This document shows positions 1 to 24,303 of a DNA stretch of 64,000 bases, piece after piece. The stretch lies in contig NW_003314275.1 in assembly GCF_000143415.4 (NCBI RefSeq), positions 1 to 64,000 on the forward strand, given 5' to 3'. Position 1 is the stretch's first letter. Each line of letters opens with the position of its first letter. A model generated the notes under the pieces. That model was not told the DNA's origin, made no database searches, and saw only the letters and a program-made list of their open reading frames with translations. This DNA comes from Selaginella moellendorffii. Lineage: Eukaryota; Plantae; Lycopodiophyta. Made by a program: the position numbers and the translations under genes.

Positions 1-157
1 AAACCCTAAACCCTAGACCCTAAACCGTAAACCCTAAACCCTAAACCCTAAACCCTAAACCCTAAACCCTAAACCCTAAACCCTAAACCCTAAACCCTAA
101 ACCCTAAACCCTAAACCCTAAACCCTAAACCCTAAACCCTAAACCCTAAACCCTAAA
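1..157 (+). repeat. Terminal telomeric tract (CCCTAAA)n, C-strand of a left chromosome end
   Basis: About 22 CCCTAAA units from base 1, with variants CCCTAGA and CCGTAAA. Confidence 0.97.
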
Positions 158-359
158 CAGGTGATGGATGAAGCTCCCGCAGACACACTCCCCTGAGTGA
201 TCACGTGCTGGAGATGCCTCCCGAATCCCGGTTCGTTCCTGGTCATGGCTAAACTCGCTTTGCGAGCTTAGCCACATCTTTTACTACGCTTTGCAAGAGA
301 CGGAAGCATATGATTGCATCCTTCTTTGCGTAACCGATGACCTTCAGGGTCTGGCCGAT

Positions 360-1125
360 GGACTCTAGGTATGTCCCAGTCACCTCTGGTCGTCCCCCAC
401 CGGTCAACGCCCGGTCAACGCGCAGTCTACTGTCCAAACAGGAATATTCCCGAATATTCCCTGACAGTCAGATTGTTGACCGAGTCAACGAGGCCTACAC
501 CATTCGATTCTGCACCCCTTTCCAAGTTTGACAACGTTGGTCTCATCTCCTTACGATGGATACCACACCTTGGAAAGCTTGCGAATCTCATAATGATGCC
601 ATGCGACGACGTCGACGTCACACACGCCGACACCTCGCAGGAAAAGGACCTTTCTGCATGACCAAAAGACCTCGGGTACGTACCAGTCACTCCAGGCCAC
701 CTCCCTTTCGAGTCAACGCCCGGTCAACGCGGAGTCAACGGTCAGAACGGAATATTCCCCAATATTCCGACTGTATCCCTGTTGACCGAGTCAAAACGGC
801 ATATACCGTTGGATTCCGCTCTTCCTTCCGATCGTGAATATGTGAGTTTCAACTCTGAACTCCTCACACGATTCGTTGAAAAGCGTGTATTCCGTTAAAA
901 CGGTACCGCTCCTTCGACATCGGCGATGCACGCCGACAACTTGCGGGATGGCTCTCCCCTGCACCACCGCTGGACTTCGGGTATGTATGAGTGACCTCAG
1001 GCCCTCCACCATCCCAGTCCACACACGGTCAACGCGGGGACAACGGTCAACGACGGAATATTCCCAGAATATTCCCTGCAAAGTGGACCACGTTTTTCGC
1101 TGCCGGGTATGTACGAGTGACACAA
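360..1125 (+). promoter_or_regulatory. Three tandem subrepeats (~310-bp period) with W-box clusters (GGTCAA/TTGACC) and heat-shock-element-like arrays; also in units 2, 3, 6 and partly 4
   Basis: gGAAtaTTCccGAAtaTTCc at 441-460 is a perfect 4-pentamer HSE, with imperfect copies near 749 and 1056. GGTCAA at 402, 413, 722, 1027, 1045. Subrepeat starts near 364, 671, 976 and 1102. Confidence 0.5.
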
Positions 1126-1350
1126 GCATTGTGGACGTAACGCATGCATCATATCATGCCGCGTTTACAAGTTATCTTGTGTCAAAGGTATGTCACCCGC
1201 CGGCCAAACGCTTACTGTCTTCGGCAATTAGCCGAAGTCATTCTCCGCGACTACCACTGCTGTGGAGTAACCAACACCAGCTTTGCTACGTTCGCACCCT
1301 CGCGAGCCAACGCTGCCACGCCAGTTCGCATGGCCGCCACACGGACTCGC

Positions 1351-1376
1351 GCCACGTGACAGAGCCAAAATATAAG
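1351..1376 (+). promoter_or_regulatory. Putative core promoter of the PLE pseudo-LTR (G-box GCCACGTG and TATA-like TATAAG)
   Basis: GCCACGTG at 1351-1358 and TATAAG at 1371-1376, about 55 nt upstream of the hammerhead core. Confidence 0.4.
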
Positions 1377-1412
1377 TAGAGTCGGCACCGAGCTAGGGTT
1401 AGGGTAGACACT

Positions 1413-1470
1413 AGACGACTACACCCGGCTGATGAGTCCCAAAAAGGACGAAACCGGTCTCGGGTTGTCT
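1413..1470 (+). ncRNA. Type I minimal hammerhead ribozyme (PLE-type)
   Basis: Stem I ACCCGG/TCGGGT (extended by AGACG/TGTCT), CTGATGA at 1429-1435, stem II GTCC-caaaaa-GGAC, GAAA, palindromic mini stem III ACCGGT, GTC cleavage triplet at 1457-1459. Confidence 0.9.
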
Positions 1471-1829
1471 CTTGTCCTCTCCCTCGCTCACGAATGAATG
1501 AAAATTCATTCCCTTGCCTCCTCTACTTGCTCTCGATCACGCCGTTTCAACAACGGCACACGGAGAATGTGGATTGCACAAAGTGGTGCCGCGATCTCGC
1601 CGGATTGCAGCACCGCGGGGTGTCTTTGACCCTAAACGCCTAAACGCGCCTAAATCCTAAACTCTCTGCGGTTCAAAAGCATCCGAGCGGGCCTCACCAG
1701 CTTTGCTCGGTTGCAAAAGCACATCCCACGCACCAAGTAAGCTTAAGTTCTCACACTGTTTCTATTGTTTCCAGAAGAATTCAGTAAATTTGAACAACAA
1801 TCTACCAAAGTCAAACCTCTTTGCCAATG

Positions 1830-4800
1830 GCAGGCCAAGACAACTCCATACATGGCTCTGGGATAGGAGAAGCCAGCCACGATGCCCCTCACTCCCTGCG
1901 CACAGGTCTGGCACAGCAAGTCTCCAGGCCGGGCATTTGTGTTGGCCCTTGCGCGCTGCACCTCACCGCCAGGACGCCACAGAAATCCCTGCCTGGAGCT
2001 GCTAACCGCCACTAAGAGTCTGGGAGCTAGCTCGGCATCTCCACACAACAGTTTCTCTGGCGTCTCGGGTGGCCCAGCTCCTCTGACTCAGGTCCAGCAC
2101 AGCAAGTGCCCCACAAAGGCTTTTTGGCCGCCTCTGGTTGCTGCCTCGGCACCACCAAAGGATCTCCAAAAAGCCTAAGGGGATTGCTCCCTGCTGTTGA
2201 GAGCACGCGCCCCACCCAGACATCACCACAGAACTGTTGTGATCGACCAGAATCCGCCGTAGGAGACACAATTGCAACTGCAACTACAAATGCCCGCCTC
2301 TGCTCCTCCAGCATCCTCTCCACCGTCAGATCTCCCGATCTAACGGCCCACGTGGTCCAAGCCTCAATCGTAAAAAATTCTAAGTCCCAGCACTTAGATT
2401 TTTTAATGGGCTATGGAGGAGAAAGATGCAAGGAGCAGCCACGGCAGAGCATTCTGTCTTGAGCACGCCACAGCAGCAAGCCAACGGCAAGCCAAGACAA
2501 CCCCAAGCATGATTCTGGATTCAGAGAAACCAGCCACGATGCCCCTCTCTCCCCTCGCTAGGGTCTGGCACAGCAAGTCTCCAGGCCAGGCATTTGCGTT
2601 GGCCCCTGTGCGCCGCACTTCGCTGCCACAGCGCCACAAAAAATCCCTGCCCGGAGCCGCTCACCGCCACTAAGAGTCTGGGAGCTAGCTTGGATTCTCA
2701 ACACAGCAATCTTTTTGGTGTTTCCCGCGGCCCAGCTCCCCTGAATCGGGTCTGGCACAGCTAACTCCCCACAAAGGCTTTTTGCCCCTTTTGGTCCAGT
2801 GCCTTGGCACCACCAAGAGATCATCAAAAATGCCAAGGGAGCTGCTCCCTGCCACACAGAGCGCCCACCCCGCCCAGAGATCACCATAAAAACGCTGTGC
2901 TTCACCAAAATCTGCCATGGGAGAAGCCTTTGCAACAGCAATTGCAAAGGGCCACTCACGCTGCCCTCTCTTCCCTCCTCCACCATTGGATCATACAGAT
3001 CTAACGGCTCAAACGCTCAGCCTTTGAGTTGCCAAAAATTTCTAAGTCCTAGCACTTGGTTTTTGGCAATGGAGAGGAAGCTACGTGAGCATCGCAGCTA
3101 CGTCTTGAGCACGCCACGGCCCAAGTCACCACAGCCAGCTGCTCCAGCAGCAGCAGCAGCCGCCGACGCAGGCAGCACCAGCCACTGCAACAGCCCGCGG
3201 CCTGCCAACACCAGCAGCTGCCGCGGCTGCTGCCCCAGCCGGCCAGCCAGCAGTGCCACGGCCGGCCTCCAGCGACCGCCACAGCGAGCACTTGGGCCAG
3301 CACTCGCCGCCCAAAGCGCCAGCTCTGTGGCTAGCCGTGGCCCAGCCCGTTAGCACCGCGTCCCGGCCAGCCGCTGCTCAGCAGCACCACCAGCGCTGCC
3401 CAGCAGCGCCCTGCTGCACCAGGCACCTCTGCATGATGCTGCGCGCCGCCCAGCAGCGCCAAGCACCGCTGCACGCCGTTCAGGGCCGCCACGCGCCGCC
3501 CGGAGCTGCTGCGCCCTGCCTAGCGCCTCCCTGCACTGCCTGGTGCCAACAGCAAACCAAGAAAACTCCATACGTGACTCTGGGACAGGAGAAGCCAGCC
3601 ATGATGCCCCTCACTCCCTGCATACAGGTCTGGCACAGCAAGTCCCCAGGCCGGGCATTTCCGTAGGTCCCTGTGCGTGCTGCACCTCACCGCCAGGACG
3701 CCACAGAAATCCCTGCCTGGAGCTGCTAACCGCCACTAAGAGTCTGGGAGCTAGCTCGGCATCTCCACACAACAGCTTCTCTGACGTCTTGTGCGGCCCA
3801 GCCCCTCCGACTCAGGTCCGGCACAGCAAATGCCCCACAAAGGCTTTTTGGCCCCCCTTGGTTGCTGCCTCGGCACCACCAAGGGATCTCCAAAAATGCT
3901 AAGGGGATTGCTCCCTGCTGTTGAGAGCACCCACACCACCCAGACATCACCACAAAGCTGTTGTGATCCACTAGAATCTGCCGTGGGGGACACAATTGCA
4001 ACTGCAATTGCAAATGCCCACCTCTGCTCCTCCAGCATCCTCTCCACCGTCAGATCTCCCGATCTAACGGTCCACGTGGTCCAAGCCTGAATCGTAAAAA
4101 TTCTAAGTCCCAGCACTTAGAATTTTTTCTGGGCTATGGAGGAGAAAGATGCAAGGAGCAGCCACGGCAGGGCATTCTGTCTTGACCACGCCACAACATC
4201 AAGCCAGGACAACTCCAAGCATGGTTCTGGATTCAGAGAAACCAGCCATGTGCCCTTCTCTCCCCTCGCCAGGGTCTGGCACAGCAAGTCCCCAAGCCAG
4301 GCATTTGCGTTGGCCCCTGTGTGCCACACCTCGCTGCCACAGCGCCACAAAAAATCCCTGCCTGGAGCTGCTCACTGCCACTAAGAGTCTGGGAACTAGC
4401 TTGGCTTCTCGACACAACAATCTCTTTGGTGTTTCCTGCGGCCCAGCTCCCCTGAATCGTGTCTGGCATAGCAAACTCCCCACAAAGGCTTTTTGCCCCT
4501 TTTGGTCCAGTGCCTTGGCACCACCAAGAGATCATCAAAAATGCCAAGGGAGCTGCTCCCTACCACACAGAGCCCCAGAGATCACCATAGCAATTGCTGT
4601 GCCTCACCAAAATCCACCATGGGAGAAGCCTTTGCAACAACAACAGCCATTGCAAAGGCCGACTCACGCTCCCCTCTCCTCTCTCCTCCACCGTCGGATC
4701 GCACAAATCCAACGGCTCAAACGCTCAGCCTTTGAGTTGCCAGAAATTTCTAAGTCCTAGCACTTGGTTTTTGGCAATGGTAGAGGAAGCTACGGGAGCA

Positions 4801-6100
4801 TGGCCGCTGCGTCTTGAGCACGCCACAGCCCAGGCCACCACAGCCAGCTGCTCCAGCAGCAACAGCCGCTGACGCAGGCAGCGCCAGCCATCGCAGCAGC
4901 CCGCGGCTTGCGAACACCAACAGCTGCCGCGGCTGCTGCGCCAGCCGGCCAGCCAGCTGTGCCACGGCCGGCCTCCAGCGACCGCCACAGTGAGCACTTG
5001 GGCCAGCACTCGCCGCCCAAAGCGCCAGCTCTGTGGCTCGTCGTGGCCCAGCCCATCAGCACCGCGTCCCGGCCAGCCGCTGCCCAGCAGCACCACCAGC
5101 GCTGCCCAGCAGTGCTCCACCGCGCCAAGCACGACCGCACGCTGCTCAGGGCCGCCACGTGCTGCCCAGAGCCGCTGCGTGCTGCCTAGTGCCGCCCCGT
5201 GCCGCCCAGTGCTGCTCACGTGTGCCCAGCACCGCCCAGTGATGTGCTGTACCGCCAGCGACGCGCGGTACTGCACAGTGACGTGCGGCACTGCCCAGCG
5301 ACGCGCGGTACTGCACAGTGACGCACGGCACTGCCCAGCGACACGCAGTACTTCCAGAGACACGCGGTACAGTCCAGTGCCGCCCAGCGGCTCCAGGCCG
5401 GGCATTTACGTAGGCCCCTATGCGCTGCACCTCACTGCCAAGACGCCACAAAAATCCCTGCCTGGAGCCACTAAGAGTCTTGGAGCTAGCTTGGCATCTC
5501 CACACAACAGCTTTTCTGGCACCTGGTGCGGCCCAGCTCCCCCGACTCAGGTCCGGCATAGCAAATGCCCCACAAAGGCTTTTTGGCCCCCCTCGGCTGC
5601 TGCTTCGGCACCACCAAGGGATTTCCAAAAATGCTAAGGGGACTGCTCCCTGCTGTTGAGAGCACCCGTGCCACCCAGACATCACCACAAAGCTGCTGTG
5701 ATCTCTGGCACGATGCCCCTCACTCCCCTCGCACGGGTCTGGCACAGCATGTCTCCAGGCTGGGCATTCACACTGGCCTCTGCGCGCTGCGTTCTGCCAC
5801 CAGAGCGCCACAAAAGATCCCCACCTGGAGCTGCTCACGGCCACTAAGAGTTTGGGAGCTAGCTTGACATCTCCACTCTGCAGTCTTTTCGACGTCTAGC
5901 GCAGCCCAGCTCCCCTGACCTGGGTATGGCACAGCAAATCCCTCACAAAGGCTTTTTGCGCCCCTTTGGTATGTTGCCTTGGCACCACCAAAGGATCACC
6001 AAAGATGCCAATGGGAATGCTCCTTGCCACTCAGAGCACCCAAGCTGCCTAGACACTGCCACAACGCTGCCAAAAATCCAATCTGCCATGGATCCCCTGC
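1830..6100 (+). repeat. GC-rich complex satellite-like payload inside the PLE
   Basis: GCCACTAAGAGT-GGAGCTAGC motif recurs near 2008, 2666, 3732, 4377, 5467 and 5840; higher-order duplication ~1830-3560 vs ~3560-5190 (period ~1.72 kb); CAG/GCC-rich stretches. Confidence 0.85.
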
Positions 6101-6349
6101 AATCACTAGTGCTAGCACTGGCCCTGCAACTGCAGAGCCAAGCACTATGCCGATGGCACGGGCTCTCTCACCACCTCTGGTGCCAGATCCCTTGCAATCG
6201 CCACCCAGGCCAGCCCCTGCCACTGGAACAGAGCAGCGAGCCCTCTCGCCTTAACGCTCTCCAGGACCTGGCCCAGCGCAGCAGCCACCGTCACCTCTGC
6301 ACCTGGCTCTGCTCTGCGTGTCCATGGCACCACGCTCAACACTGTCCCC

Positions 6350-7033
6350 ACAGACTCGACGAGTGCCTCGACACAACCAACAAATCGCCCTTCCATCTAC
6401 GGAGGTACACGAGCAGGCCTTGAACGATGGCTCCGAGGATATGGCACGCTTCGTCCCTCGATCAAGATCACCTCGGTGATCCTGCTCGAGGAGTTGGATA
6501 TCCTCGATATCCACTTCTTCAAAGGCCCTCACTTTGAAGAGACACGCTGCCTCGACTCGTCCACGTTCCAGAAGCCCCTCAACGCCTACCAGTACCTCCC
6601 CTGGACGTCGGTTCACCCATGGCACCAGAAAGTGGCATTTATCCGCAGCGAGCTCCGGAGATACCTCCTCCGTGAGAGCACGGCCCATGGATCTCATGCC
6701 ATGCGCATGCGGTTCTACCACCGCCTCTGTGTCCGGGGACACCCGATCTCCTTCCTCCAACACTGCCTCTCTAGCATCTCCTCTGACCAGCGACATGAAG
6801 CTCTCCTTGCACGCTCGCGCCGCTCTAGCGACGCTTGTCGACGGACCCCCCTCGCCTTTAAGCTCCCCTACACGCTTCACAGCACGCAGCTAGGCTTGGG
6901 GGACATCCTAAACCCTAAACAGGTGATGGATGAAGCTCCCGCAGACACACTCCCCTGAGTGATCACGTGCTGGAGATGCCTCCCGAATCCCGGTTCGTTC
7001 CTGGTCATGGCTAAACTCGCTTTGCGAGCTTAG
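6350..7033 (+). pseudogene. PLE reverse transcriptase C-terminal fragment with the catalytic YTDD deleted
   Basis: Same sequence as 10350-11065 but with a 32-bp deletion between AGGTACAC direct repeats at ~6410. Confidence 0.85.
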
Positions 7034-8174
7034 CCACATCTTTTACTACGCTTTGCAAGAGACGGAAGCATATGATTGCATCCTTCTTTGCGTAACCGAT
7101 GACCTTCAGGGTCTGGCCGATGGACTCTAGGTATGTCCCAGTCACCTCTGGTCGTCCCCCACCGGTCAACGCCCGGTCAACGCGCAGTCTACTGTCCAAA
7201 CAGGAATATTCCCGAATATTCCCTGACAGTCAGATTGTTGACCGAGTCAACGAGGCCTACACCATTCGATTCTGCACCCCTTTCCAAGTTTGACAACGTT
7301 GGTCTCATCTCCTTACGATGGATACCACACCTTGGAAAGCTTGCGAATCTCATAATGATGCCATGCGACGACGTCGACGTCACACACGCCGACACCTCGC
7401 AGGAAAAGGACCTTTCTGCATGACCAAAAGACCTCGGGTACGTACCAGTCACTCCAGGCCACCTCCCTTTCGAGTCAACGCCCGGTCAACGCGGAGTCAA
7501 CGGTCAGAACGGAATATTCCCCAATATTCCGACTGTATCCCTGTTGACCGAGTCAAAACGGCATATACCGTTGGATTCCGCTCTTCCTTCCGATCGTGAA
7601 TATGTGAGTTTCAACTCTGAACTCCTCACACGATTCGTTGAAAAGCGTGTATTCCGTTAAAACGGTACCGCTCCTTCGACATCGGCGATGCACGCCGACA
7701 ACTTGCGGGATGGCTCTCCCCTGCACCACCGCTGGACTTCGGGTATGTATGAGTGACCTCAGGCCCTCCACCATCCCAGTCCACACACGGTCAACGCGGG
7801 GACAACGGTCAACGACGGAATATTCCCAGAATATTCCCTGCAAAGTGGACCACGTTTTTCGCTGCCGGGTATGTACGAGTGACACAAGCATTGTGGACGT
7901 AACGCATGCATCATATCATGCCGCGTTTACAAGTTATCTTGTGTCAAAGGTATGTCACCCGCCGGCCAAACGCTTACTGTCTTCGGCAATTAGCCGAAGT
8001 CATTCTCCGCGACTACCACTGCTGTGGAGTAACCAACACCAGCTTTGCTACGTTCGCACCCTCGCGAGCCAACGCTGCCACGCCAGTTCGCATGGCCGCC
8101 ACACGGACTCGCGCCACGTGACAGAGCCAAAATATAAGTAGAGTCGGCACCGAGCTAGGGTTAGGGTAGACACT

Positions 8175-8232
8175 AGACGACTACACCCGGCTGATGAGTC
8201 CCAAAAAGGACGAAACCGGTCTCGGGTTGTCT
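8175..8232 (+). ncRNA. Hammerhead ribozyme copy 2
   Basis: Identical to 1413-1470; CTGATGA at 8191. Confidence 0.9.
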
Positions 8233-8416
8233 CTTGTCCTCTCCCTCGCTCACGAATGAATGAAAATTCATTCCCTTGCCTCCTCTACTTGCTCTCGATC
8301 ACGCCGTTTCAACAACGGCACACGGAGAATGTGGATTGCACAAAGTGGTGCCGCGATCTCGCCGGATTGCAGCACCGCGGGGTGTCTTTGACCCTAAACG
8401 CCTAAACGCGCCTAAA

Positions 8417-8607
8417 CCCTAAACCCTAAACCCTAAACCCTAAACCCTAAACCCTAAACCCTAAACCCTAAAACCCTAAAACCCTAAACCTAAACCCTAA
8501 ACCCCTAAACCTAAACCCTAAACCCTAAACCCTAAACCCTAAACCCTAAACCCTAAACCCTAAACCCTAAACCCTAAACCCTAAAACCCTAAACCCTAAA
8601 CCCTAAA
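8417..8607 (+). repeat. Interstitial telomeric tract
   Basis: (CCCTAAA)n with single-base indel variants. Confidence 0.95.
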
Positions 8608-10349: not shown

Positions 10350-11065
10350 ACAGACTCGACGAGTGCCTCGACACAACCAACAAATCGCCCTTCCATCTAC
10401 GGAGGTACACAGATGACGGAGTGAGCACTTGGACAGGTACACGAGCAGGCCTTGAACGATGGCTCCGAGGATATGGCACGCTTCGTCCCTCGATCAAGAT
10501 CACCTCGGTGATCCTGCTCGAGGAGTTGGATATCCTCGATATCCACTTCTTCAAAGGCCCTCACTTTGAAGAGACACGCTGCCTCGACTCGTCCACGTTC
10601 CAGAAGCCCCTCAACGCCTACCAGTACCTCCCCTGGACGTCGGTTCACCCATGGCACCAGAAAGTGGCATTTATCCGCAGCGAGCTCCGGAGATACCTCC
10701 TCCTTGAGAGCACGGCCCATGGATTCCATGCCATGCGCATGCGGTTCTACCACCGCCTCTGTGTCCGGGGACACCCGATCTCCTTCCTCCAACACTGCCT
10801 CTCTAGCATCTCCTCTGACCAGCGACATGAAGCTCTCCTTGCACGCTCGCGCCGCTCTAGCGACGCTTGTCGACGGACCCCCCTCGCCTTTAAGCTCCCC
10901 TACACGCTTCACAGCACGCAGCTAGGCTTGGGGGACATCCTAAACCCTAAACAGGTGATGGATGAAGCTCCCGCAGACACACTCCCCTGAGTGATCACGT
11001 GCTGGAGATGCCTCCCGAATCCCGGTTCGTTCCTGGTCAGGGCTAAACTCGCTTTGCGAGCTTAG
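10350..11065 (+). pseudogene. Penelope-like RT, motif C through thumb/linker; N-terminal half absent; no GIY-YIG
   Basis: RRYTDDG..WTG..LRPSIKIT..LDILDI..FQKPLNAYQYLPWTSVHPWHQKVAFIRSELRRY..RGHP..LAFKLPY; after TGA (10988-10990) the same frame continues VITCWRCLPNPGSFLVRAKLALRA*, resembling the PLE linker motif. Confidence 0.85.
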
Positions 11066-13411: not shown

Positions 13412-13448
13412 CCCTAAACCCTAAACCCTAAACCCTAAACCCTAAACC
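13412..13448 (+). repeat. Short telomeric tract
   Basis: About 5 CCCTAAA units. Confidence 0.9.
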
Positions 13449-13449
13449 G

Positions 13450-13542
13450 GTGGATTGCACAAAGTGGTGCTGCAATCTCGCCGGATTGCAGCACCGCGGG
13501 GTGTCTTTGACCCTAAACGCCTAAACGCGCCTAAATCCTAAA
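13450..13542 (+). mobile_element. PLE unit 5, ~93-bp 3' tail only
   Basis: Matches 1569-1661 with two substitutions. Confidence 0.88.
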
Positions 13543-13608
13543 CCCTAAACCCTAAACCCTAAACCCTAAACCCTAAACCCTAAACCCTAAAACCCTAAAC
13601 CCTAAACC
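13543..13608 (+). repeat. Short telomeric tract
   Basis: (CCCTAAA)n followed by GGTTTTAGGG. Confidence 0.9.
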
Positions 13609-13617
13609 GGTTTTAGG

Positions 13618-15936: not shown

Positions 15937-16073
15937 CCCTAAACCCTAAAACCGGCTAAACCCTAAACCCTAAACCCTAAACCCTAAACCTAAACCCTAA
16001 ACCCTAAACCCTAAACCCTAAACCCTAAACCCTAAACCCTAAACCCTAAACCCTAAATCCTAAACCCTAAACC
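15937..16073 (+). repeat. Interstitial telomeric tract capping the LINE
   Basis: (CCCTAAA)n with an ACCGGCTAAA variant. Confidence 0.95.
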
Positions 16074-16074
16074 A

Positions 16075-17502
16075 GTTGAAGCCTTCCTTGAGGAGGAGCA
16101 CGCCCTGCCAGACAAGAGAACAGAGTCTCGGGCGTACCAGCACCAGGAGGTTGACACCCCGGAGCGAGTGGCAAAAGCCCAGTCGAGAGTGAGGAAGACT
16201 CGGGGCTGCGGAAAGGTGGTAGAAGCGCTGCACTCCTCGGACGGGAACAGTGATGCTAACAAGGAGTACACCTCACATAAAGTGAACGAGGGAACACATG
16301 GTCAGGCCGAAGAGCACAAGGTGGCAGCAGTAGGGGAAGGTGGAAGTGACTTGGTCCACGACGACACGAGAGGAAAGGCCGTCCCTGTCAAGCTGGCTGA
16401 GACTCTGCAAAGAGCAGTAGCAGAGAAGGAAGAGGAACTCCGCAAGAAGGCACTGATTGCTGTTTTCAGGGGGAAGTTCCCAACAGGTCGCATGGCTAAC
16501 GATTGGATCAATGCAACGCTGGGCCAGGGAATCCTCATGAAGAAGATGCTGCCGCATGGGAAGGGCTGCTACACAGTTGTCTTTGAGACAGAGGAGGCAC
16601 GGTCTCAGGCGGAGGCCATGCATGGCCTCATTGATGAGAATTGGGCGGTGTCATTCCACCCATGGATCCCAAGGTTCACCGCAGAGGACCAGGCTCGTCT
16701 CAAGGGCGGGAGCTTTCCAGTGAACATTGCATTGTGGGACGTTCCCATGGAAATGCGGATCACACCGGTGATACAGGAGCTGGTTGAAGGAAGTATTGGC
16801 CAGATAGCGGCCGGCCTCGACACTGTAGAAGCAGAGGGTGTGCTAGGTCCCATCCGTCTCAAAGTTTTCGTGTCAGCCCCGGCTGAAATCCCGACAGAGA
16901 TCGCAGTGCTGGGCCAGTATATCAGGATCCAAACGGAGAACTCAGAACCTAGATGCAACTTTTGCCAGTGCGCTGGACACCGGGAGGAGGCCTGCTCAGT
17001 CAAGCGGAACAGGTTGGCATCCCAGAAGCCGTTTGAGTTACCTGCAGAGCAGGAGCGGATCTTGAAGGCACGCCCTCCGGACCAAGCTCCCCACATTCGC
17101 TTCCCGGTCGCCCCACCACTCTTGGGCTCATCCTCACAGCCCAAACTGTTCGAGGGACCTATTACGGATGTCGAAGGAGATGGCTTCCAGCCGGTCCTCC
17201 CTCGAACAGTAGGAATGGCGGTCAGGTGGATTCCCCCTAAGCGGGAATTAAGTCCCACAGAGGCGGGAGACTGGCTGATGTGCCGCGGGAACACAGCCTT
17301 CCCAGAGGTTGTCACTATTGGAGACTACCACACACGCATGGAGAGTGCTATCACTGAGTGGACGGGCTTTGCGAAGTACACTGTCCGAGGCTTCTCCTGG
17401 ACGAAGCACAGGGGGAAGATGACTGCGGTGTGGACCATCTCCACAGAATGGAGGGCGAGACCCCGTAACTCCTCACTTTCTTGGAAGTACGTGGCTCCAT
17501 GA
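16075..17502 (+). CDS. LINE ORF1 (DUF4283/RRM-like region + CCHC zinc knuckle), 5'-incomplete
   Basis: Frame is open back to the telomere junction; GCYTVVFETEE..FHPWIPRF; CNFCQCAGHREEAC; stop overlaps the ORF2 start as ATGA (17499-17502). Confidence 0.85.
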   Translation, partial: VEAFLEEEHALPDKRTESRAYQHQEVDTPERVAKAQSRVRKTRGCGKVVEALHSSDGNSDANKEYTSHKVNEGTHGQAEEHKVAAVGEGGSDLVHDDTRGKAVPVKLAETLQRAVAEKEEELRKKALIAVFRGKFPTGRMANDWINATLGQGILMKKMLPHGKGCYTVVFETEEARSQAEAMHGLIDENWAVSFHPWIPRFTAEDQARLKGGSFPVNIALWDVPMEMRITPVIQELVEGSIGQIAAGLDTVEAEGVLGPIRLKVFVSAPAEIPTEIAVLGQYIRIQTENSEPRCNFCQCAGHREEACSVKRNRLASQKPFELPAEQERILKARPPDQAPHIRFPVAPPLLGSSSQPKLFEGPITDVEGDGFQPVLPRTVGMAVRWIPPKRELSPTEAGDWLMCRGNTAFPEVVTIGDYHTRMESAITEWTGFAKYTVRGFSWTKHRGKMTAVWTISTEWRARPRNSSLSWKYVAP

Positions 17503-20500
17503 CAACTCTCACGCTCGTCACCTGGAACTGCCGGGGACTCAGCTGGACCGGCAGTCGACTCAACAAAAGGGCGCAGCTCAAGTCCCACATCCGAGAGATC
17601 AGCTTAGAAGGAGATATCGACATCCTATGCTTGCAAGAGCACAAAATGACTGTGGCCCCAGACTACACCTTTGGAATGAGGGGACGGCTCTGGTGGAACC
17701 CGGCCACGCAAGCAGTGGCCAGACCAGGAGGGGGCACAGCAGTGGTAGTCTCAACCAAATGGTCTGCTCAGGTACGAAACCACCTTGTTCTCGTCCCAGG
17801 AAAGGCTCAATTGCTTGTCCTTCACCTCCACTTTGGACGGGTGGGGATAATCAACGTCTATGCACCAACGAAGAAAGGGAGACGTGCAGAATTCTGGCTG
17901 AGTGTGTTACAGTCTGCCCAGGGGCAAGCAGATGAATGGCTGGTCCTGGGAGATTTCAACATGGTCGAGGACGTCTGTGATCGCAGGGGTATGCAGGAAA
18001 CAATTCAGCCACGTGAACAGAAGCAGTGGAGTCAGCTCATGGACATACTGGGGCTCATGGACCTCCAGCATGCTGCGGGATTCGCACCTCATGCTCACCC
18101 TTTTACAAGGCGACAGACAGTATCCTCCCAGTCGAGACTGGACCGGATTTACGCCTCGTCTCGCATACGGCAGGATGGGGGAAGCCTAAAAACGTGGCTG
18201 GGATTTGCCTCCTTCTCAGATCACGACCCCCTCAGATGCGTGATCCAGCTCCAAAGGGACAAAGGGACAGCGGTCCAGCGATCAATCACTAGAGCCACGC
18301 TGCGAGACCCAGTGGCAATTGGGCTTATACACGACGCTCTTGCGCAGAACAAGCTGGGACTGATCCCTGTGCTCTTGTCTTGCTCACAGAAGCTCCGGGC
18401 GCGCCAGAAGGATCTCAAAGGGGTGGTGATGAAGGACCTTAGACTGGCCAGGAAGAAGGTCGCAGCTGCACACAGGATGTTGCTGAACACGCAAGATGAG
18501 CTCAAGTGGCAAACAATACTGGATGAACGTGAAGCCGAGCTACGTGACATGGAGTACGCTGCATGGAGCAAGGGCGTTCGGGCCATGGAAGATGGATGGG
18601 CCCTGAATGAACGCCTTCTCAACAAGGCTTTCTTTAGGGGAATCAGGCCAGTGAAGGACTCTCCTCCCATTCTAGGACTGAAGCACAGTGACGGGCGAGT
18701 CATCGAGGACCAACAGGGGATGCAACAGCTCGCCCAGGAGTTTTACCAACTTCTATATACGGCCCAGCAGTGGACTCCAGAGAGGGAAAGGGCGGCGGTG
18801 GAAGTGCTTGCGTCCCTTCCCCAGCGAGTCCCCCATGAGTGGCACGACTCACTGAAGACGGACTTCACACTGGAGGAGCTTCGGGAAGCGCTCGGGAAGC
18901 TCAGCAACGACAAGCAGCCAGGTATCGATGGCCTCTTGCCCATTTTCTTCGAGGAGCACTGGGAGACCATAGGCCCGCTGCTGCTACAAGCATGGTGGGA
19001 TGCTCAACGTGATGGGACCTTGCCTCGCGAGATCCTTGAGGGCCAGATTGCGCTTATTCCAAAGAGGGGGGACCTGCAGGAGCTGAAGAATTGGAGGCCA
19101 ATCACCATGCTCAACACGTCCTACAAGGTCTATGCCAAAGCAATGACCCTCAAGCTCCAAGCTGTCATGCCGCTGATCATCCGGGAGCAGCAGACAGGGT
19201 TTGTTCCAGGGCGGCAAATCGCAGAAAACATCTGGACGTACCTGCTGGCTCAGAGATGGGCAGAGATCTCTAACCAACAAACTGCAGCATGGCTTTTGGA
19301 CTTCGAGAAGGCCTACGATCGGGTGGACTGGAGGTTCCTAGAGGAGTGCATGAACACGATCGGCATCCCGAGAGAGATGGTCACTAGGATCTCGTTACTA
19401 TACCGAGGAGCCACAAGCAGAGTCACAATCAATGGCGAGACGGGACCGAGTTTCCAGCTGGGACGTTCAATACGCCAAGGGTGTCCACTAGCACCCTATC
19501 TTTTTCTGATTGTGGCTGAGGCCCTGGGCACGTTTCTAGCGGAAGGCGGACGCATTAAAGGACTCACACTGCCGGCTGCGAGACAGCAACTTCCGGGAAC
19601 CACAAGGGTGTCTCGGGAACTCCTTGATGGTGCTTTTGCGGACGACACTGCCTTGTTCCTACTTGCGACTAAGGAGAACATGGATGCAGCTAAGAAGGCG
19701 CTGGAGACGTTCAACCTCGCGGCTGGTGCAGCAATTAACTGGAACAAATCAGTGGGCATAAATTGGGGGCAACCAGGCATCGAATCTTGGGGGCAGGACA
19801 TTGGCTTCCAGTGGCTCAAACCAGGAGAAGACGCTAGGTACCTGGGGATCCAGGTTGGTACTCGGTTCAGTGCAGCACTTCAGGATGACACCTTGCTCCG
19901 ACGGGTACGAACGTCAATCCAGAAGTGGGCTCCCCGGAAACTCGGCTTGCCAGCGAGAGTGGTAGTCGCTAGGAGCATCATTCTGCCTGGCATCTGGTAC
20001 CACCTCTCCATCTGGCCTGTTCCAGAACGCACTCTTAGAAAGGTACGCACGATGGTCCGTCAGTATTTGTGGCGGGGCGCTCTGGTCACAGGGAGGAGCA
20101 TGGCCAAGGTCGCGTGGCAATCTACAGCACGTCCGCGAGTCTTGGGAGGACTTGGAGTAATCGATCCGAGTGACATGGCGAAGGCGCTACGGTACAAAAT
20201 CCTCCTCATGGGCCTTCAACCAGGTAATCAACCTTGGAGACTCATGTTTAGGCAGAACTTGTTGGCAATCCGGCCCAAGCACAACACTGCAAGACCGTGG
20301 GAAGAAGATCCACGTTGGCTCTTTGCTGAGGGGCCGAAGCAAGTAGTCAAGGGCGGCACTCTAGTCCAGGGGCTTCTCCGGTTATGGAGCGCGTTTCCAG
20401 TCAGTAGGGAATTGCCAGGGCGAGCGGAGGACTGGCTGAACCAGCCCCTGTTCTTCAACGACCTCTTCAAACTGGATGATAGGACATTGGGCAGGGAGGA

Positions 20501-22001
20501 CCACTACACAATCTGGAGAAAGCTACATAGCGCAGGCTTCCGAACTCTCAAGCAGCTAGTGCGGGTTCTGGACAAGGACAGGAGGAAGACTACGAGGCAT
20601 ATGCAGGTCTTTAACCCGGGACGGTGGAGGAAAGTCCACCTTGATCTTCTTCGCATTATCAGAGCAGTGAGTGAGGCGAAGCAGGGGCAGCTCTGGCCTA
20701 GGCGTTGTCTCAAATCTGGAGACTTTGTGGCTCTGCAACGGGACGTGGAGTCAGACAGGGAACGAGTTAGCTTGGGGGCCTGGACACGGGCGTTTACGGC
20801 CCCAACACCAGCTTGGGAGGACAGGGATGTGGAGGTATGGTTCGTTGTGTCTCCAGACCAAAATGTTGGGCGTCCTTTTCGAGTCTTGAGAGGCGACATG
20901 CTGTTGCCAGCAGGGGACGAACAGGTCATGCCGATGGTGACGGATGACGAGGTCAAGGGTAGGATTCGAGTAATACGACAGGCTCCGAAACAATCGGTGG
21001 TGGTTCAATCGTTGGCTGCACTAGAAGGGGAAGGCATTCTTAGATGGTGGCGACAGCAGCTCATCGAGGATCTGGATTGGGACCCCGCAGCATGGAAACG
21101 AGGAGCGAGGAGCTTCTTCTCCTTCGGCGTCAAGGAAGCAAGGGATGGTCTCTTGACCAGCAGGGAGGAGGCCCGAGGGGAGATCCCCAAGCTCTGGAAG
21201 AAATGGATCGAGCAAGGAGTTGAAGCAAATCAGGTGGTGGGCAACACGCTTGCATTCTGGAAACTACCGGTACAGGAGAAAGTCAAGGCCACCTCTTGGT
21301 TGGTGGCAAATAACGGGCTGCCGGTAGGGCAGCGGTTCCAGGAAGAAGCATGCCGACGGTGCAAGGAGTGTGGCGAGTTGGAGACAGCGCAACATGTCCT
21401 ATGGGAATGCGACGTGGCGAGAGAAGTTTGGCGACAGATCTTCAAGGCGACGCAGGAACTCGGAGACATTCCAGAGTTTGAGGCTCGGAGTGGGGATATC
21501 CTCCACTGGTTTGAGGGAGCCAGAGGCCCAGCCATTGGTCCAGCTTGGAGGCGTATTCGCTGCTATGGACGGCACCGATGGAACATGCGAGTCCGGTGGG
21601 ACGTGACAGGGGCTGAAGTTGGGATGTCCATCTGGGAGGCGTTGGGCCAAGAGTGCTGGTCCATTTGGAGGGCAACAGGACTGCAGGCACTTTGGGAGGC
21701 ACGGAACCACTGTCGCTTTGATGGGCAACAAGCGAGAATATCGGCAGTGGTGGCATCATGGTGGAGACTCACTCTCGCAGCGGTGCGTCTTCACTACACC
21801 ATCCTGAAAGAGCGGGTGAAACCGAGGCAGCTCGAGGAGTGGAGATCTAGGTGGCTCCCATGCTTCGGCAAATTGGGAGGTGGCGAGATTCGCTGGCAAT
21901 GGCGCCCCCCAGACTCTGTTCTAAGGTCAGCTCATGGGGGAGACTTGGACATCGACATGATTCGCTCGAGACGACCACGTCCACTTCTACTCCAGGACTA
22001 G
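17499..22001 (+). CDS. LINE ORF2: APE endonuclease, reverse transcriptase, C-terminal zinc finger (1500 aa)
   Basis: TWNCRGL, LQEHK, GDFN, SRLDRIY, SDH; PGIDG, WRPITMLN, DFEKAYD, RQGCPLAP, FADD; CKECGELETAQHVLWEC. Confidence 0.96.
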   Translation: MTTLTLVTWNCRGLSWTGSRLNKRAQLKSHIREISLEGDIDILCLQEHKMTVAPDYTFGMRGRLWWNPATQAVARPGGGTAVVVSTKWSAQVRNHLVLVPGKAQLLVLHLHFGRVGIINVYAPTKKGRRAEFWLSVLQSAQGQADEWLVLGDFNMVEDVCDRRGMQETIQPREQKQWSQLMDILGLMDLQHAAGFAPHAHPFTRRQTVSSQSRLDRIYASSRIRQDGGSLKTWLGFASFSDHDPLRCVIQLQRDKGTAVQRSITRATLRDPVAIGLIHDALAQNKLGLIPVLLSCSQKLRARQKDLKGVVMKDLRLARKKVAAAHRMLLNTQDELKWQTILDEREAELRDMEYAAWSKGVRAMEDGWALNERLLNKAFFRGIRPVKDSPPILGLKHSDGRVIEDQQGMQQLAQEFYQLLYTAQQWTPERERAAVEVLASLPQRVPHEWHDSLKTDFTLEELREALGKLSNDKQPGIDGLLPIFFEEHWETIGPLLLQAWWDAQRDGTLPREILEGQIALIPKRGDLQELKNWRPITMLNTSYKVYAKAMTLKLQAVMPLIIREQQTGFVPGRQIAENIWTYLLAQRWAEISNQQTAAWLLDFEKAYDRVDWRFLEECMNTIGIPREMVTRISLLYRGATSRVTINGETGPSFQLGRSIRQGCPLAPYLFLIVAEALGTFLAEGGRIKGLTLPAARQQLPGTTRVSRELLDGAFADDTALFLLATKENMDAAKKALETFNLAAGAAINWNKSVGINWGQPGIESWGQDIGFQWLKPGEDARYLGIQVGTRFSAALQDDTLLRRVRTSIQKWAPRKLGLPARVVVARSIILPGIWYHLSIWPVPERTLRKVRTMVRQYLWRGALVTGRSMAKVAWQSTARPRVLGGLGVIDPSDMAKALRYKILLMGLQPGNQPWRLMFRQNLLAIRPKHNTARPWEEDPRWLFAEGPKQVVKGGTLVQGLLRLWSAFPVSRELPGRAEDWLNQPLFFNDLFKLDDRTLGREDHYTIWRKLHSAGFRTLKQLVRVLDKDRRKTTRHMQVFNPGRWRKVHLDLLRIIRAVSEAKQGQLWPRRCLKSGDFVALQRDVESDRERVSLGAWTRAFTAPTPAWEDRDVEVWFVVSPDQNVGRPFRVLRGDMLLPAGDEQVMPMVTDDEVKGRIRVIRQAPKQSVVVQSLAALEGEGILRWWRQQLIEDLDWDPAAWKRGARSFFSFGVKEARDGLLTSREEARGEIPKLWKKWIEQGVEANQVVGNTLAFWKLPVQEKVKATSWLVANNGLPVGQRFQEEACRRCKECGELETAQHVLWECDVAREVWRQIFKATQELGDIPEFEARSGDILHWFEGARGPAIGPAWRRIRCYGRHRWNMRVRWDVTGAEVGMSIWEALGQECWSIWRATGLQALWEARNHCRFDGQQARISAVVASWWRLTLAAVRLHYTILKERVKPRQLEEWRSRWLPCFGKLGGGEIRWQWRPPDSVLRSAHGGDLDIDMIRSRRPRPLLLQD

Positions 22002-22109
22002 GTCTAGCTGCGGCATATGAGGATCACGTAGAGTAGCTCATGGAGAGGGCGGCACGCCCATTTTTTGTATTAGTCCCATTGGGACATGGGGAATGTACAT
22101 ACACGTTCA

Positions 22110-22173
22110 GCGATCTCGCCGGATTGCAGCACCGCGGGGTGTCTTTGACCCTAAACGCCTAAACGCGCCTAAA
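22110..22173 (+). mobile_element. 64-bp PLE 3' tail fused to the LINE 3' UTR
   Basis: GCGATCTCGCCGGATTGCAGCACCGCGGGGTGTCTTTGACCCTAAACGCCTAAACGCGCCTAAA, identical to 1591-1654. Confidence 0.92.
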
Positions 22174-22227
22174 CCCTAAACCCTAAACCCTAAACCCTAA
22201 ACCGGTAAACCCTAAACCCTAAACCCA
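22174..22227 (+). repeat. Innermost telomeric tract
   Basis: (CCCTAAA)n with an ACCGGTAAA variant. Confidence 0.92.
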
Positions 22228-24303
22228 AAGTTCCCAACAGGTCGCATGGCTAACGATTGGATCAATGCAACGCTAGGCCAGGGAATCCTCATGAAGATGA
22301 TGCTGCCACATGGAAAGGGCTGCTACACAGTTGTCTTTGAGACAGAGGAGGCACGGTCTCAGGCGGAGGCCATGCATGGCCTCATTGATGAGAATTGGGC
22401 GGTGTCATTCCACCCATGGATCCCAAGGTTCACCGCAGAGGACCAGGCTCGTCTCAAGGGCGGGAGCTTTCCAGTGAACATTGCATTGTGGGATGTTCCC
22501 ATGGAAATGCGGATCACACTGGTGATACAGGAGCTGGTTGAAGGAAGTATCGGCCAGATAGCGGCCGGCCTCGACACTGTAGAAGCAGAGGGTGTTCTAG
22601 GTCCCATCCGCCTCAAAGTTTTCGTGTCAGCCCCGGCAGAGATTGCAGTGCTGGGCCAGTATATCAGGATCCAAACGGAGAACTCAGAACCTAGATGCAA
22701 CTTTTGTCAGCGTGCTGGACACCGGGAGGAGGCCTGCTCAGTCAAGCGGAACAGGTTGGCATCCCAGAAGCCGTTTGAGTTACCTGTAGAGCAGGAGCGG
22801 ATCTTGAAGGCACGCCCTCTGGACCAAGCTCCCCACATTCGCTTCCCGGTCGCCCCACCACTCTTGGGCTCATCCTCACAGCCCAAACTGTTCGAGGGAC
22901 CTATTACAGATGTCGAAGGAGATGGCTTCCAGCCGGTCCTCCCTCGAACAGTAGGAATGGCGGTCAGGTGGATTCCCCCTAAGCGGGAATTAAGTCCCAC
23001 AGAGGCGGGAGACTGGCTGATGTGCCGCGGGAACACAACCTTCCCAAAGGTCGTCACTATTGGAGACTACCACACACGCATGGAGAGTGCTATCACTGAG
23101 TGGACGGGCTTTGCAAAGTACACTGTCCGAGGCTTCTCCTGGACGAAGCACAGGGGGAAGATGACTGCGGTGTGGACCATCTCCACAGAATGGAGGGCGA
23201 GACCCCGTAACTCCTCACTTTCTTGGAAGTACGTGGCTCCATGACAACTCTCACGCTCGTCACCTGGAACTGTCGGGGACTTAGCTGGACCGGCAGTCGA
23301 CTCAACAAAAGGGCGCAGCTCAAGTCCCACATCCGGGAGATCAGCTTAGAAGGAGATATCGACATCCTATGCTTGCAAGAGCACAAAATGACTGTGGCCC
23401 CAGACTACACCTTTGGAATGAGGGGACGGCTCTGGTGGAACCCGGCCACGCAAGCAGTGGCCAGACCAGGAGGGGGCACAGCAATGGTAGTCTCAACCAA
23501 ATGGTCTGCTCAGGTACGAAACCACCTTGTCCTCGTCCCAGGAAAGGCTCAATTGCTTGTCCTTCACGTCCACTTTGGACGGGTGGGGATAATCAACGTC
23601 TATGCACCAACGAAGAAAGGGAGACGTGCAGAATTCTGGCTGAGTGTGTTACAGTCTGCCCAGGGGCAAGCAGATGAATGGCTGGTCCTGGGAGATTTCA
23701 ACATGGTCGAGGACGTCTGTGATCGCAGGGGTATGCAGGAAACAATTCAGCCACGTGAACAGAAGCAGTGGAGTCAGCTCATGGACATACTGGGGCTCAT
23801 GGACCTTCAGCATGCTGCGGGATTCGCACCTCACGCTCACCCTTCTACAAGGCGACAGACAGTATCCTCCCAGTCGAGACTGGACCGGATTTACGCCTCA
23901 TCTCGCATACGGCAGGATGGGGGAAGCCTTAAAACGTGGCTGGGATTTGCCTCCTTCTCAGATCACGACCCCCTCAGATGCGTGATCCAGCTCCAAAGGG
24001 ACAAAGGGACAGCGGTCCAGCGATCAATCACTAGAGCCACGCTGGGAGACCCGGTGGCGATTGGGCTTATACACGACGCTCTTGCGCAGAACAAGCTGGG
24101 GCTGATCCCTGTGCTCTTGTCTTGCTCACAGAAGCTCCGGGCGCGCCAGAAGGATCTCAAAGGGGCGGTGATGAAGGACCTTAGACTGGCCAGGAAGAAG
24201 GTCGCAGCAGCACACAGGATGTTGCTGAACACGCAAGATGAGTTCAAGTGGCAAACAATACTGGATGAACGTGAAGCAGAGCTACGTGACATGGAGTACG
24301 CTG
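22228..24303 (+). mobile_element. Second LINE copy, truncated at both ends (partial ORF1 22246-23244; APE part of ORF2 23241-24303)
   Basis: Near-identical to 16474-18561 with scattered SNPs and a 12-bp in-frame deletion (PAEIPTEIAV to PAEIAV). Confidence 0.93.

What the first reader, a model, noticed from the sequence alone, without database searches (positions are those of the whole stretch)
1..24303. 24-kb chromosome end built by alternating retrotransposition and telomerase capping, using both a PLE and an L1-clade LINE
Seen: retroelement segments all on the C-strand with 5' ends toward the tip, separated by seven (CCCTAAA)n tracts, with variable 5' truncations, a fixed PLE 3' end and no TSDs. 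Known: endonuclease-deficient Athena/Coprina-type PLEs attach to telomeres in this polarity (reported in bdelloid rotifers, fungi and Selaginella), and Drosophila HeT-A/TART/TAHRE form head-to-tail telomere arrays without telomerase. Inference: each cDNA was primed on the G-strand 3' end and then re-capped by telomerase, so the array is a time series, oldest at 24303. A hybrid telomerase + PLE + LINE end-extension system in a plant is not something I recognise as described.
Basis: partly seen in the sequence, partly recalled or inferred. Interest (0 to 1): 0.9.

Follow-up and report, generated by a model that had tools for sequence, protein, structure and literature searches.

The report
Retroelement chain at spikemoss chromosome end
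The first 24 kb of this spikemoss chromosome end is a head-to-tail chain of truncated copies of a non-coding Penelope-like retroelement separated by short telomere-repeat tracts, a pattern already published for this plant. It also holds two copies of an L1-type jumping gene, which got there by targeting the Penelope element's tail hairpin, not by having a telomere-priming tail of its own.

Summary
There are seven (CCCTAAA)n tracts, all on the + strand. Six copies of one element (P) and two LINE copies lie sense-strand-up with their 5' ends toward the tip. Each has a different 5' end, and every P copy ends in the same hairpin plus variant telomere-like tail.

P is a non-autonomous, endonuclease-less Penelope-like element. 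It keeps only the RT C-terminus, which is 59% identical to a Selaginella moellendorffii PLE RT (E 5.5e-72), and it has a hammerhead ribozyme. This kind of telomere-attached PLE was published for S. moellendorffii in 2007.

The LINE part needs correcting. The 38 nt plus tail that the LINE "shares" with P is target flank. In an S. moellendorffii scaffold, a 1.64-kb partner element with the LINE's own 3' end sits twice inside that hairpin, at the same 3' junction, with 17-20-nt target-site duplications. So the LINE is an endonuclease-bearing, site-specific parasite of the PLE tail.

What is unusual here is that both LINE copies are capped 5' by telomere tracts. The innermost copy is also 3'-truncated at 24303 with no tract.

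Earlier notes of this scan describe the same LINE-in-hairpin pairing on other pieces of this genome.

The parts
1..158 (+). Terminal telomere tract (C-strand repeats) at the start of the assembled piece
159..1662 (+). P1: the 3' 1.5 kb of the P unit, with hammerhead 1411-1478 and variant tail 1629-1662. It is joined directly to P2, giving a pLTR-like 1.2-unit tandem. Its 5' end coincides with P's internal telomere-like seed.
1663..8423 (+). P2: the longest P unit (6.76 kb). It has a 4.7-kb repetitive non-coding 5' part, a frameshifted RT C-terminal remnant at 6395-7018, hammerhead 8173-8240, hairpin 8345-8378 and variant tail 8391-8423.
8424..8611 (+). Telomere tract T1
8612..12455 (+). P3: 5'-truncated P. 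It holds the RT-remnant ORF 9926-10990 (RYTDD motif plus thumb only) and hammerhead 12205-12272.
12456..12582 (+). Telomere tract T2
12583..13418 (+). P4: the last 0.8 kb of P, with hammerhead 13168-13235
13419..13448 (+). Telomere tract T3 (4 units)
13449..13542 (+). P5: a micro-copy made of the 60-nt hairpin module plus tail. Its hairpin variant forms a perfect stem.
13543..13608 (+). Telomere tract T4
13609..15936 (+). P6: 5'-truncated P and the most divergent copy, with hammerhead 15686-15753. About 10 nt of inverted telomere unit sit at its 5' junction.
15937..16073 (+). Telomere tract T5
16074..22110 (+). LINE L1: ORF1 at 16168-17502 with a CCHC knuckle, and ORF2 at 17481-22001 with APE, RT and zf-RVT, both open. 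It has no poly(A). Its 3' end is ambiguous by 2 nt (22109-22111).
22111..22180 (+). Remnant of a P tail: the 3' half of the hairpin plus the variant tail. This is the LINE's target flank.
22181..22226 (+). Telomere tract T6.
22227..24303 (+). LINE L2: equals L1 16474-18561 at 97.6% identity. It is truncated at both ends and stops inside ORF2, with no tract and no microhomology to the flank.

Best explanation
This is a chromosome end of Selaginella (S. moellendorffii or a very close relative), extended several times by an endonuclease-less Penelope-like element (PLE).

How P is added (inferred):
1. P is a non-autonomous derivative of the PLE and depends on a PLE RT supplied in trans.
2. The P RNA ends in a 34-nt hairpin followed by about 3.5 variant telomere repeats and probably a few canonical repeats.
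3. That tail anneals to the G-strand 3' end, which primes the cDNA.
4. The cDNA stops short, or the new end erodes.
5. Telomerase then extends the new 3' end. In one case it started from a 14-nt telomere-like seed inside P.
6. Repetition leaves units with their 3' ends inward, separated by short tracts.
7. P1+P2 is one 1.2-unit tandem, made by a template jump or by rolling reverse transcription.

How the LINE got there. The L1-type LINE is a separate, endonuclease-bearing element. Together with a 1.64-kb non-coding partner, X, it inserts at one position at the base of the upper stem of the PLE hairpin, making 17-20-nt target-site duplications. This step is shown in S. moellendorffii.

In this window, L1 was reverse-transcribed from a nick in the tail of a PLE copy that lay at or near the end. 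Its 5' side was then resolved by one of two routes:
- the distal fragment was lost and telomerase healed the end; or
- a deletion ran into the upstream tract.
Both routes are inferred.

L2, which is 3'-truncated, marks either an older break healed by endonuclease-independent LINE reverse transcription or a later deletion. This too is inferred.
For: Anatomy and polarity.

P is a PLE derivative:
- The RT remnant hits a 580-aa S. moellendorffii RT (P0075) at 59% identity, E 5.5e-72.
- P0075 has PLE motifs and ends 26 aa after the thumb.
- More distant relatives of P0075 carry GIY-YIG.
- No GIY-YIG match appears in the window or in L001.
- The window covers only aa 346-576 of that RT, so P is non-autonomous.
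- The hammerhead HH9 hit occurs five times at E 6e-7, with the core intact.

The tail as docking module:
- The hairpin folds at -29.7 kcal/mol, z -2.6, and the P5 variant makes a perfect stem.
- The autonomous PLE copy and P share only the last 113 nt plus tail at 97-99% identity, while their RT regions are about 75% identical at nucleotide level.

Order of addition:
- Copies group by position: P1=P2, P3~P4, P6 apart.
- The two innermost tracts are the least pure.

LINE targeting:
- Two X insertions in L001 share the window LINE's 3' junction, have TSDs of different length, and share the LINE's last ~66 nt, including a compensatory stem change.
- The LINE's APE, RT and CCHC motifs are intact.
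Against:
- Only one LINE 3' junction lies in this window. Repeated targeting rests on two X insertions in one other scaffold, plus unverified notes of this scan.
- No P body or TSD lies upstream of L1, so its route is inferred.
- The hammerhead score (40.8 bits) is below Rfam's gathering score of 52.
- The positional similarity of copies could also come from local gene conversion.
- The key 2007 paper could not be read.
Confidence: 0.6

Rival explanations
1. Hitch-hiking chimera. A LINE copy sitting in a PLE hairpin is transcribed through into the remaining 38 nt, the tail and the repeats. This chimeric RNA docks on the G-overhang like a PLE RNA and is copied onto the end by the LINE's own RT or by the PLE RT. 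Telomerase then caps it.
For: - L1 (and L2) have telomere tracts rather than PLE body at their 5' side.
- L1 is intact and near full length, and has no poly(A) or other evident terminator.
- The tail downstream of L1 is identical to the P tails.
Against: - The chimeric RNA would keep only half of the hairpin module that the autonomous PLE and P share.
- X insertions in L001 show the ordinary TSD route.
- L2 has no tail at all.
- No RNA evidence could be obtained.
Confidence: 0.25
2. All units were inserted by the LINE endonuclease into a pre-existing long telomere, in the manner of TRAS/SART. P would be a SINE-like passenger that uses the LINE's 3' tail.
For: The LINE has an intact APE domain, and the last 38 nt plus tail are identical in the LINE context and in P.
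Against: - The shared stretch is target flank, duplicated as a TSD around X.
- The LINE's own 3' end is shared with X, not with P.
- P shares its 3' module with an autonomous PLE.
- The LINE junction lies in the hairpin, not in a telomere repeat.
Confidence: 0.04
3. The array is not a record of retrotransposition. It would be a misassembly, or the product of recombination such as unequal exchange, break-induced replication or an ALT-like process among subtelomeric repeats.
For: - Copies are 98.4-99.9% identical.
- The inner boundary at 24303 is abrupt.
Against: - Every unit has its own 5' breakpoint, and the copies carry private substitutions.
- P5 belongs to a different sequence lineage from its neighbour.
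- The same architecture occurs in an independent S. moellendorffii assembly.
Confidence: 0.08

Closest known systems
Telomere-associated endonuclease-deficient PLEs of Selaginella moellendorffii (Gladyshev & Arkhipova 2007), with hammerheads (Cervera & de la Pena 2014, PMC4209133)
   Same: Same genus. The RT is homologous (59% identity over the remnant), there is no GIY-YIG domain, a hammerhead is present, the 3' end carries reverse-complement telomere repeats, the polarity is the same, and short tracts lie between 5'-truncated units.
   Different: The units here are a non-autonomous derivative with a 4.7-kb unrelated repetitive 5' part. The hammerhead has a loop-less palindromic helix III, which is the dimer type, whereas PMC4209133 describes canonical helices. 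I could not read the 2007 paper to compare details.
Athena PLEs and Terminons of bdelloid rotifers
   Same: They attach to G-overhangs through C-rich repeats at the RNA 3' end, with a hammerhead nearby, and form chains of units with telomere repeats between them (as summarised in PMC8557442 and PMC12477314).
   Different: Terminons are giant multi-ORF units of more than 40 kb. Here the unit is 6.8 kb and non-coding. The clade was not determined.
Site-specific APE-type LINEs: R1 and Tx1-type elements, TRAS/SART of Bombyx, and Tx1-1_ACar in telomere repeats (PMC7265360, PMC10088271)
   Same: An endonuclease-bearing LINE with one exact 3' junction and TSDs, living in a multicopy 'safe' target at chromosome ends, and with a non-autonomous partner sharing its 3' stem-loop.
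   Different: The target is not a host repeat or gene but the terminal hairpin of another retroelement, a telomeric PLE. There is no poly(A).
Endonuclease-independent L1 retrotransposition at dysfunctional telomeres or breaks (Morrish et al. 2002 and 2007; from my own knowledge, not read here)
   Same: LINE cDNA joined to a DNA end without a TSD, possibly 3'-truncated, as for L2 at 24303.
   Different: Those events were seen in repair-deficient cultured cells. Here the mechanism is only inferred from one junction.
Drosophila HeT-A/TART/TAHRE and Chlorella Zepp
   Same: Head-to-tail LINE arrays at chromosome ends with 3' ends inward. Zepp is in the green lineage.
   Different: Drosophila lacks telomerase and has no intervening simple repeats. 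Here telomerase tracts separate the units, and the main builder is a PLE, not a LINE.

Membership tests
Endonuclease-deficient Penelope-like elements (Athena/Coprina type) | PLE-type reverse transcriptase | tested here: met
   The remnant (window 10370-10987) gives 2477 hits at E<=0.001. The best is the S. moellendorffii RT P0075 (E 5.5e-72), which has ADKN, FLPKIHK, YIDD and thumb motifs. Relatives at ~30% identity carry GIY-YIG. Only the C-terminal third survives in the window.
Endonuclease-deficient Penelope-like elements (Athena/Coprina type) | No GIY-YIG endonuclease | tested here: met
   P0075 ends 26 aa after the thumb and has no PF01541 hit. EN+ relatives align only to the RT and thumb in the window and in L001.
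Endonuclease-deficient Penelope-like elements (Athena/Coprina type) | Reverse-complement telomere repeats at the 3' end, located at telomeres with the 3' end inward | tested here: met
   The invariant variant tail follows all seven hairpin modules, and all units lie on the C-strand.
Endonuclease-deficient Penelope-like elements (Athena/Coprina type) | Hammerhead ribozyme motif | tested here: met
   Five HH9 hits at 40.8 bits, E 5.8e-07, below the gathering score of 52. The CUGAUGA...GAAA...GUC core is intact.
Endonuclease-deficient Penelope-like elements (Athena/Coprina type) | Autonomous: a complete RT ORF | tested here: not met
   Only aa 346-576 of the RT are present and RT motifs 1-4 are absent. 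P is therefore filed as a non-autonomous derivative.
Endonuclease-deficient Penelope-like elements (Athena/Coprina type) | Clade placement (Coprina or Athena) by RT phylogeny | not tested
   No labelled reference sequences were on hand. The nearest relatives are ~600-aa RTs of conifers, Ginkgo and Closterium, with a Puccinia RT further off.
L1-clade LINE | N-terminal AP endonuclease, RT and C-terminal CCHC in ORF2 | tested here: met
   Pfam hits are Exo_endo_phos 3.9e-14, RVT_1 9.2e-26 and zf-RVT 3.5e-08. The GDFN, SDH and FADD motifs are present. The best database relatives are plant LINEs at <=29% identity.
L1-clade LINE | Placement in the L1 clade by RT phylogeny | not tested
   No reference set was available. 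The ORF1 CCHC knuckle and Atlas leads to DUF4283/zf-CCHC are only suggestive.
L1-clade LINE | Poly(A) 3' end | tested here: not met
   The element ends ...GTTCAGC, directly abutting the target.
Telomere-repeat-specific LINEs (TRAS/SART type) | Endonuclease cuts within the telomere repeat itself | tested here: not met
   The 3' junction lies in the PLE hairpin, 38 nt upstream of the first repeat, in the window and in two X insertions.
Telomerase-independent retrotransposon telomeres (HeT-A/TART) | Arrays without telomerase repeats | tested here: not met
   Six internal tracts plus a terminal tract are present.

The most novel reading that the evidence does not exclude
The LINE has turned the PLE's docking tail into its own route to chromosome ends. 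Read-through LINE+tail RNAs would be reverse-transcribed onto G-overhangs, so a cross-class chimera contributes links to a plant telomere. Separately, the innermost, 3'-truncated LINE would record the healing of a terminal deletion by endonuclease-independent LINE reverse transcription in a wild-type plant.
Probability: 0.25. Interest if true: 0.75.

Novelty: new variant of a known kind. Interest (0 to 1): 0.55.

Why it matters
- The PLE chain is a clean natural record of repeated end addition in a telomerase-positive plant. It has dated layers, a tandem junction, micro-copies, and one healing event seeded by an internal telomere-like motif.
- The internal tracts are 30-190 bp, against published terminal fragments of 1.5-5.5 kb (PMC3400083). 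This suggests additions happen on very short or uncapped ends.
- The first TTAA site lies 895 bp in, so such restriction-fragment measurements include retroelement sequence.
- A LINE whose only seen target is the tail hairpin of a telomeric PLE is a parasite of a parasite, sitting at the site that links retroelements to telomerase evolution. I found no description of it in five literature searches.
- It offers a testable case of endonuclease specificity for a structured target.

Tried and rejected
Reads:
There is therefore no DNA or RNA read evidence.
- For disclosure: sandbox scripts read the whole window, including a local BLAST against L001. The Rfam scan of L001 covered that locus's own telomere-like tracts.

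Protein searches:
- Searches with LINE ORF2 and with its C-terminal 407 aa found no close relative (best 29% identity; none). No other LINE copies could be fetched.
- Pfam found nothing in any P ORF.

Literature:
- PMC1890498 and PMC5850863 are not held.

Ideas considered and rejected:
- P as a SINE-like partner of the LINE sharing its tail. This was my first reading. It is rejected by the TSDs around X and by the LINE and X sharing a different 3' end.
- P5 as a local 124-bp slippage duplicate (TRF). It differs from P4 at 3 of 60 positions and matches another lineage.
- GIY-YIG remnants in the 1.4-kb P 3' region: none found.
- Continuation of L2 elsewhere in the window: none found.

Organism: names of the sequencing runs were coded. 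The species assignment rests on L001 and on shared TE families at 85-96% identity.
Full report
**Observation**

A search for three CCCTAAA units gave 77 matches, all on the + strand, against none in shuffles. TRF and direct reading resolve seven tracts:
- 1-158 at the very start of the piece
- 8391-8611
- 12423-12582
- 13386-13448
- 13510-13608
- 15904-16073
- 22148-22226

No such repeats occur beyond 24303 or in the opposite orientation. Self-comparison shows two repeat families between the tracts.

The first family is an element I call P, in six copies that all end at the same nucleotide but start at different ones:

| Copy | Coordinates | Size |
|---|---|---|
| P1 | 159-1662 | 1.5 kb |
| P2 | 1663-8423 | 6.76 kb, the longest |
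| P3 | 8612-12455 | 3.8 kb |
| P4 | 12583-13418 | 0.8 kb |
| P5 | 13449-13542 | 60 nt plus tail |
| P6 | 13609-15936 | 2.3 kb |

The second family is a LINE in two copies:
- L1 (16074-~22110) has both ORFs open.
- L2 (22227-24303) equals L1 16474-18561 at 97.6% identity.

The sense strand is the + (C-rich telomere) strand throughout, so 5' ends face the tip.
- P1 and P2 are joined with no tract.
- The first 33 nt of each internal "tract" is an invariant variant tail that belongs to the element.
- L1 is followed by 38 nt of P sequence before that tail.
- L2 has no 3' end and no tract at 24303.

**What P is**

Pfam finds nothing in any P ORF. However, the ORF at 9926-10990 contains RYTDD and a thumb-like stretch.

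An exhaustive HMMER search with residues 149-354 gave 2477 hits at E<=0.001. The best is P0075 at 59% identity and E 5.5e-72, aligned to its residues 351-554 of 580. P0075 is [quoted passage not shown] and lies on GL377752.1 of GCA_000143415.2.

Evidence that P0075 is an endonuclease-less PLE RT:
- It carries PLE-type motifs...KPADKNLG..., FLPKIHK, YIDD and the thumb.
- It stops 26 residues after the thumb.
- Its closest relatives are ~600-aa proteins of conifers, Ginkgo and Closterium without an endonuclease.
- Relatives at about 30% identity carry GIY-YIG (PF01541).
- Those EN+ relatives align only to the RT and thumb part of the window and of L001.

The window covers only residues 346-576 of P0075. 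The 4.7 kb upstream in P2 is repetitive and unrelated to the autonomous copy. P is therefore a non-autonomous, endonuclease-less PLE derivative.

Each P copy long enough to include the site has a hammerhead, giving five HH9 hits (E 5.8e-07, below gathering score) with an intact core. Helix III is the loop-less palindrome ACCGGU, so it should act as a dimer. The cut falls after 8221, which is 169 nt before the tail.

**The 3' module**

The last ~70 nt fold into a 7+7-bp hairpin (8345-8378; -29.7 kcal/mol, z -2.6), followed by the variant tail.
- The P5 variant changes two positions so that the stem becomes perfect.
- In L001, the autonomous PLE copy (ORF 10001-11743) has a different, hammerhead-less 3' UTR. 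It shares the last 113 nt plus tail with P at 97-99% identity, whereas the RT regions are ~75% identical at nucleotide level.

That is the pattern expected for a cis-acting 3' module shared by an autonomous element and its non-autonomous partner.

**The LINE**

- ORF2 (1506 aa) has Exo_endo_phos, RVT_1 and zf-RVT domains. The GDFN, SDH and FADD motifs and a terminal CCHC are present.
- ORF1 has a CX2CX4HX4C knuckle.
- The nearest database proteins are plant LINEs at <=29% identity.
- The element has no poly(A).

L001 shows otherwise:
- A 1.64-kb non-coding element X occurs twice there (99.8% alike).
- Both copies interrupt the PLE hairpin at the same 3' junction as the window LINE (...AGC | GATCTCGCC...).
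- Both are flanked by direct repeats of the upper stem-loop, about 20 nt in one case and about 17 nt in the other.
- X shares only its last ~66 nt with the LINE. That stretch includes a stem-loop with a compensatory G-C to A-U change.

So the LINE and X form an autonomous/non-autonomous pair that inserts site-specifically, by staggered cuts, into the PLE tail. The "shared tail" is target flank. Earlier notes of this scan on other pieces of this genome say the same. One of them gave me the lead, and I verified it only on L001.

**How the chain was built**

For the P units, the known PLE model fits. The tail anneals to the G-strand 3' end, cDNA is made toward the tip, and the new end is capped.

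Evidence for independent, ordered events:
- All 5' breakpoints differ, with 0-4 nt of overlap with the repeat.
- The P5 micro-copy belongs to another sequence lineage than its neighbour.
- Copies cluster by position: P1=P2, P3 and P4 differ at 1 of 803 sites, and P6 has five private changes.
- The two innermost tracts are the least pure.

Deviations from strict alternation:
- P1/P2 is a seamless 1.2-unit tandem. This is pLTR-like and is best read as one event with a template jump or rolling reverse transcription.
- P1's 5' end coincides with a 14-nt telomere-like seed inside P, so the terminal telomere grows straight out of the element.
- Three tracts have exactly seven perfect units after the tail before the first irregular unit. 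This hints that part of each tract is RNA-templated.

The internal tracts are 30-190 bp, against published terminal fragments of 1.5-5.5 kb (PMC3400083). Additions therefore seem to occur on very short ends, or the tracts shrink later.

**How the LINE copies entered the chain**

This is not settled. L1 has the PLE tail at its 3' side but a telomere tract, not PLE body plus TSD, at its 5' side. Three routes are possible:
1. Target-primed reverse transcription from a nick in a terminal PLE copy, followed by loss of the distal fragment and telomerase healing.
2. Insertion into a P5-like micro-copy, with a deletion running into the upstream tract.
3. Read-through LINE+tail RNA docking on the overhang.

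I favour routes 1 and 2 together (about 0.45) over route 3 (about 0.25-0.3), because the only junctions with both sides preserved show the ordinary TSD route. Nothing in this window excludes route 3.

L2 stops inside ORF2 at 24303, with no tract and no microhomology to the flank. This is either endonuclease-independent priming at a broken end or a later deletion. It also means the array's original base is not preserved.

**Known or new**

Telomere-attached endonuclease-less PLEs in S. moellendorffii, and their hammerheads, are published. The source is Gladyshev & Arkhipova 2007, as cited in PMC12477314, PMC8557442 and PMC4209133. I could not read the 2007 paper.

Five literature searches found no LINE that targets a PLE tail and no LINE links in a plant telomere chain.

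**Limits**

- Only one LINE 3' junction lies in this window.
- Species names of the sequencing runs were coded.
- Assignment to Selaginella rests on L001 and on shared flanking TE families at 85-96% identity.

Noticed in passing
window 6907-6921 (also 145-158, 10939-10953, 14420-14434); L001 11616-11629: P and the autonomous PLE carry a 14-nt telomere-like stretch inside the RT C-terminal coding region (LNPKQV). P1's 5' end falls exactly there, so the terminal telomere continues seamlessly from it.
   Followed up: partly
window 13446-13450, 13603-13622, 15951-15960, 22202-22209; L001 ~13975-13985: An 'ACCGG' irregularity recurs at two P 5' junctions and inside two tracts, and also in the S. 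moellendorffii locus. At P6 it forms a ~10-nt inverted telomere unit (…AAACCGGTTTT…). Its origin is unexplained.
   Followed up: no
window 8424-8480, 12456-12510, 13543-13600: Three tracts have exactly seven perfect units after the variant tail, then an irregular unit. These may be an RNA-templated part of the tract.
   Followed up: partly
L001 4787-6424 and 12234-13873: X is a 1.64-kb non-coding partner of the LINE (two copies, 99.8% alike). It holds a long hairpin that gives weak MIR156-like Rfam hits. It is absent from this window.
   Followed up: partly
L001 14060-14120: A telomere tract in the S. moellendorffii scaffold abuts a 5'-truncated gypsy-type RT sequence (…MPFGLTNAP…). This looks like a broken LTR retrotransposon healed by telomerase at the base of that chain.
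   Followed up: no
window 1822-6100: The 5' 4.4 kb of P2 is C-rich, with nested ~650/1066-bp repeats, a 1.7-kb tandem duplication (89%) and a 20-bp GC-rich minisatellite (5141-5383, 9141-9370). It has no recognisable coding capacity.
   Followed up: no
window 61377-63278 (-), 28674-28898 (-), 30998-31318 (-): Fragments of a second LINE family, about 50% amino-acid identical to L1 ORF2, lie in the TE-rich flank.
   Followed up: no
window 45139-45226 (-); L001 19286-19374 (-), 19686-19774 (-): 5S-rRNA-like hits just below the Rfam threshold lie inside a repeated element, a possible 5S-derived retroelement module.
   Followed up: no
window 30500-61100, many sites: Long 12/35-nt minisatellite arrays (GGACTCGATCTC-like) occur in both orientations inside a repeated 3-6-kb element. 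The same families are present at 85-96% identity in L001.
   Followed up: no
window 26537-27104 / 27805-28372: An AT-rich inverted repeat with 568-nt arms (87% complementary) and a 700-nt spacer, in a 30% GC island. It is a candidate foldback-type transposon.
   Followed up: no
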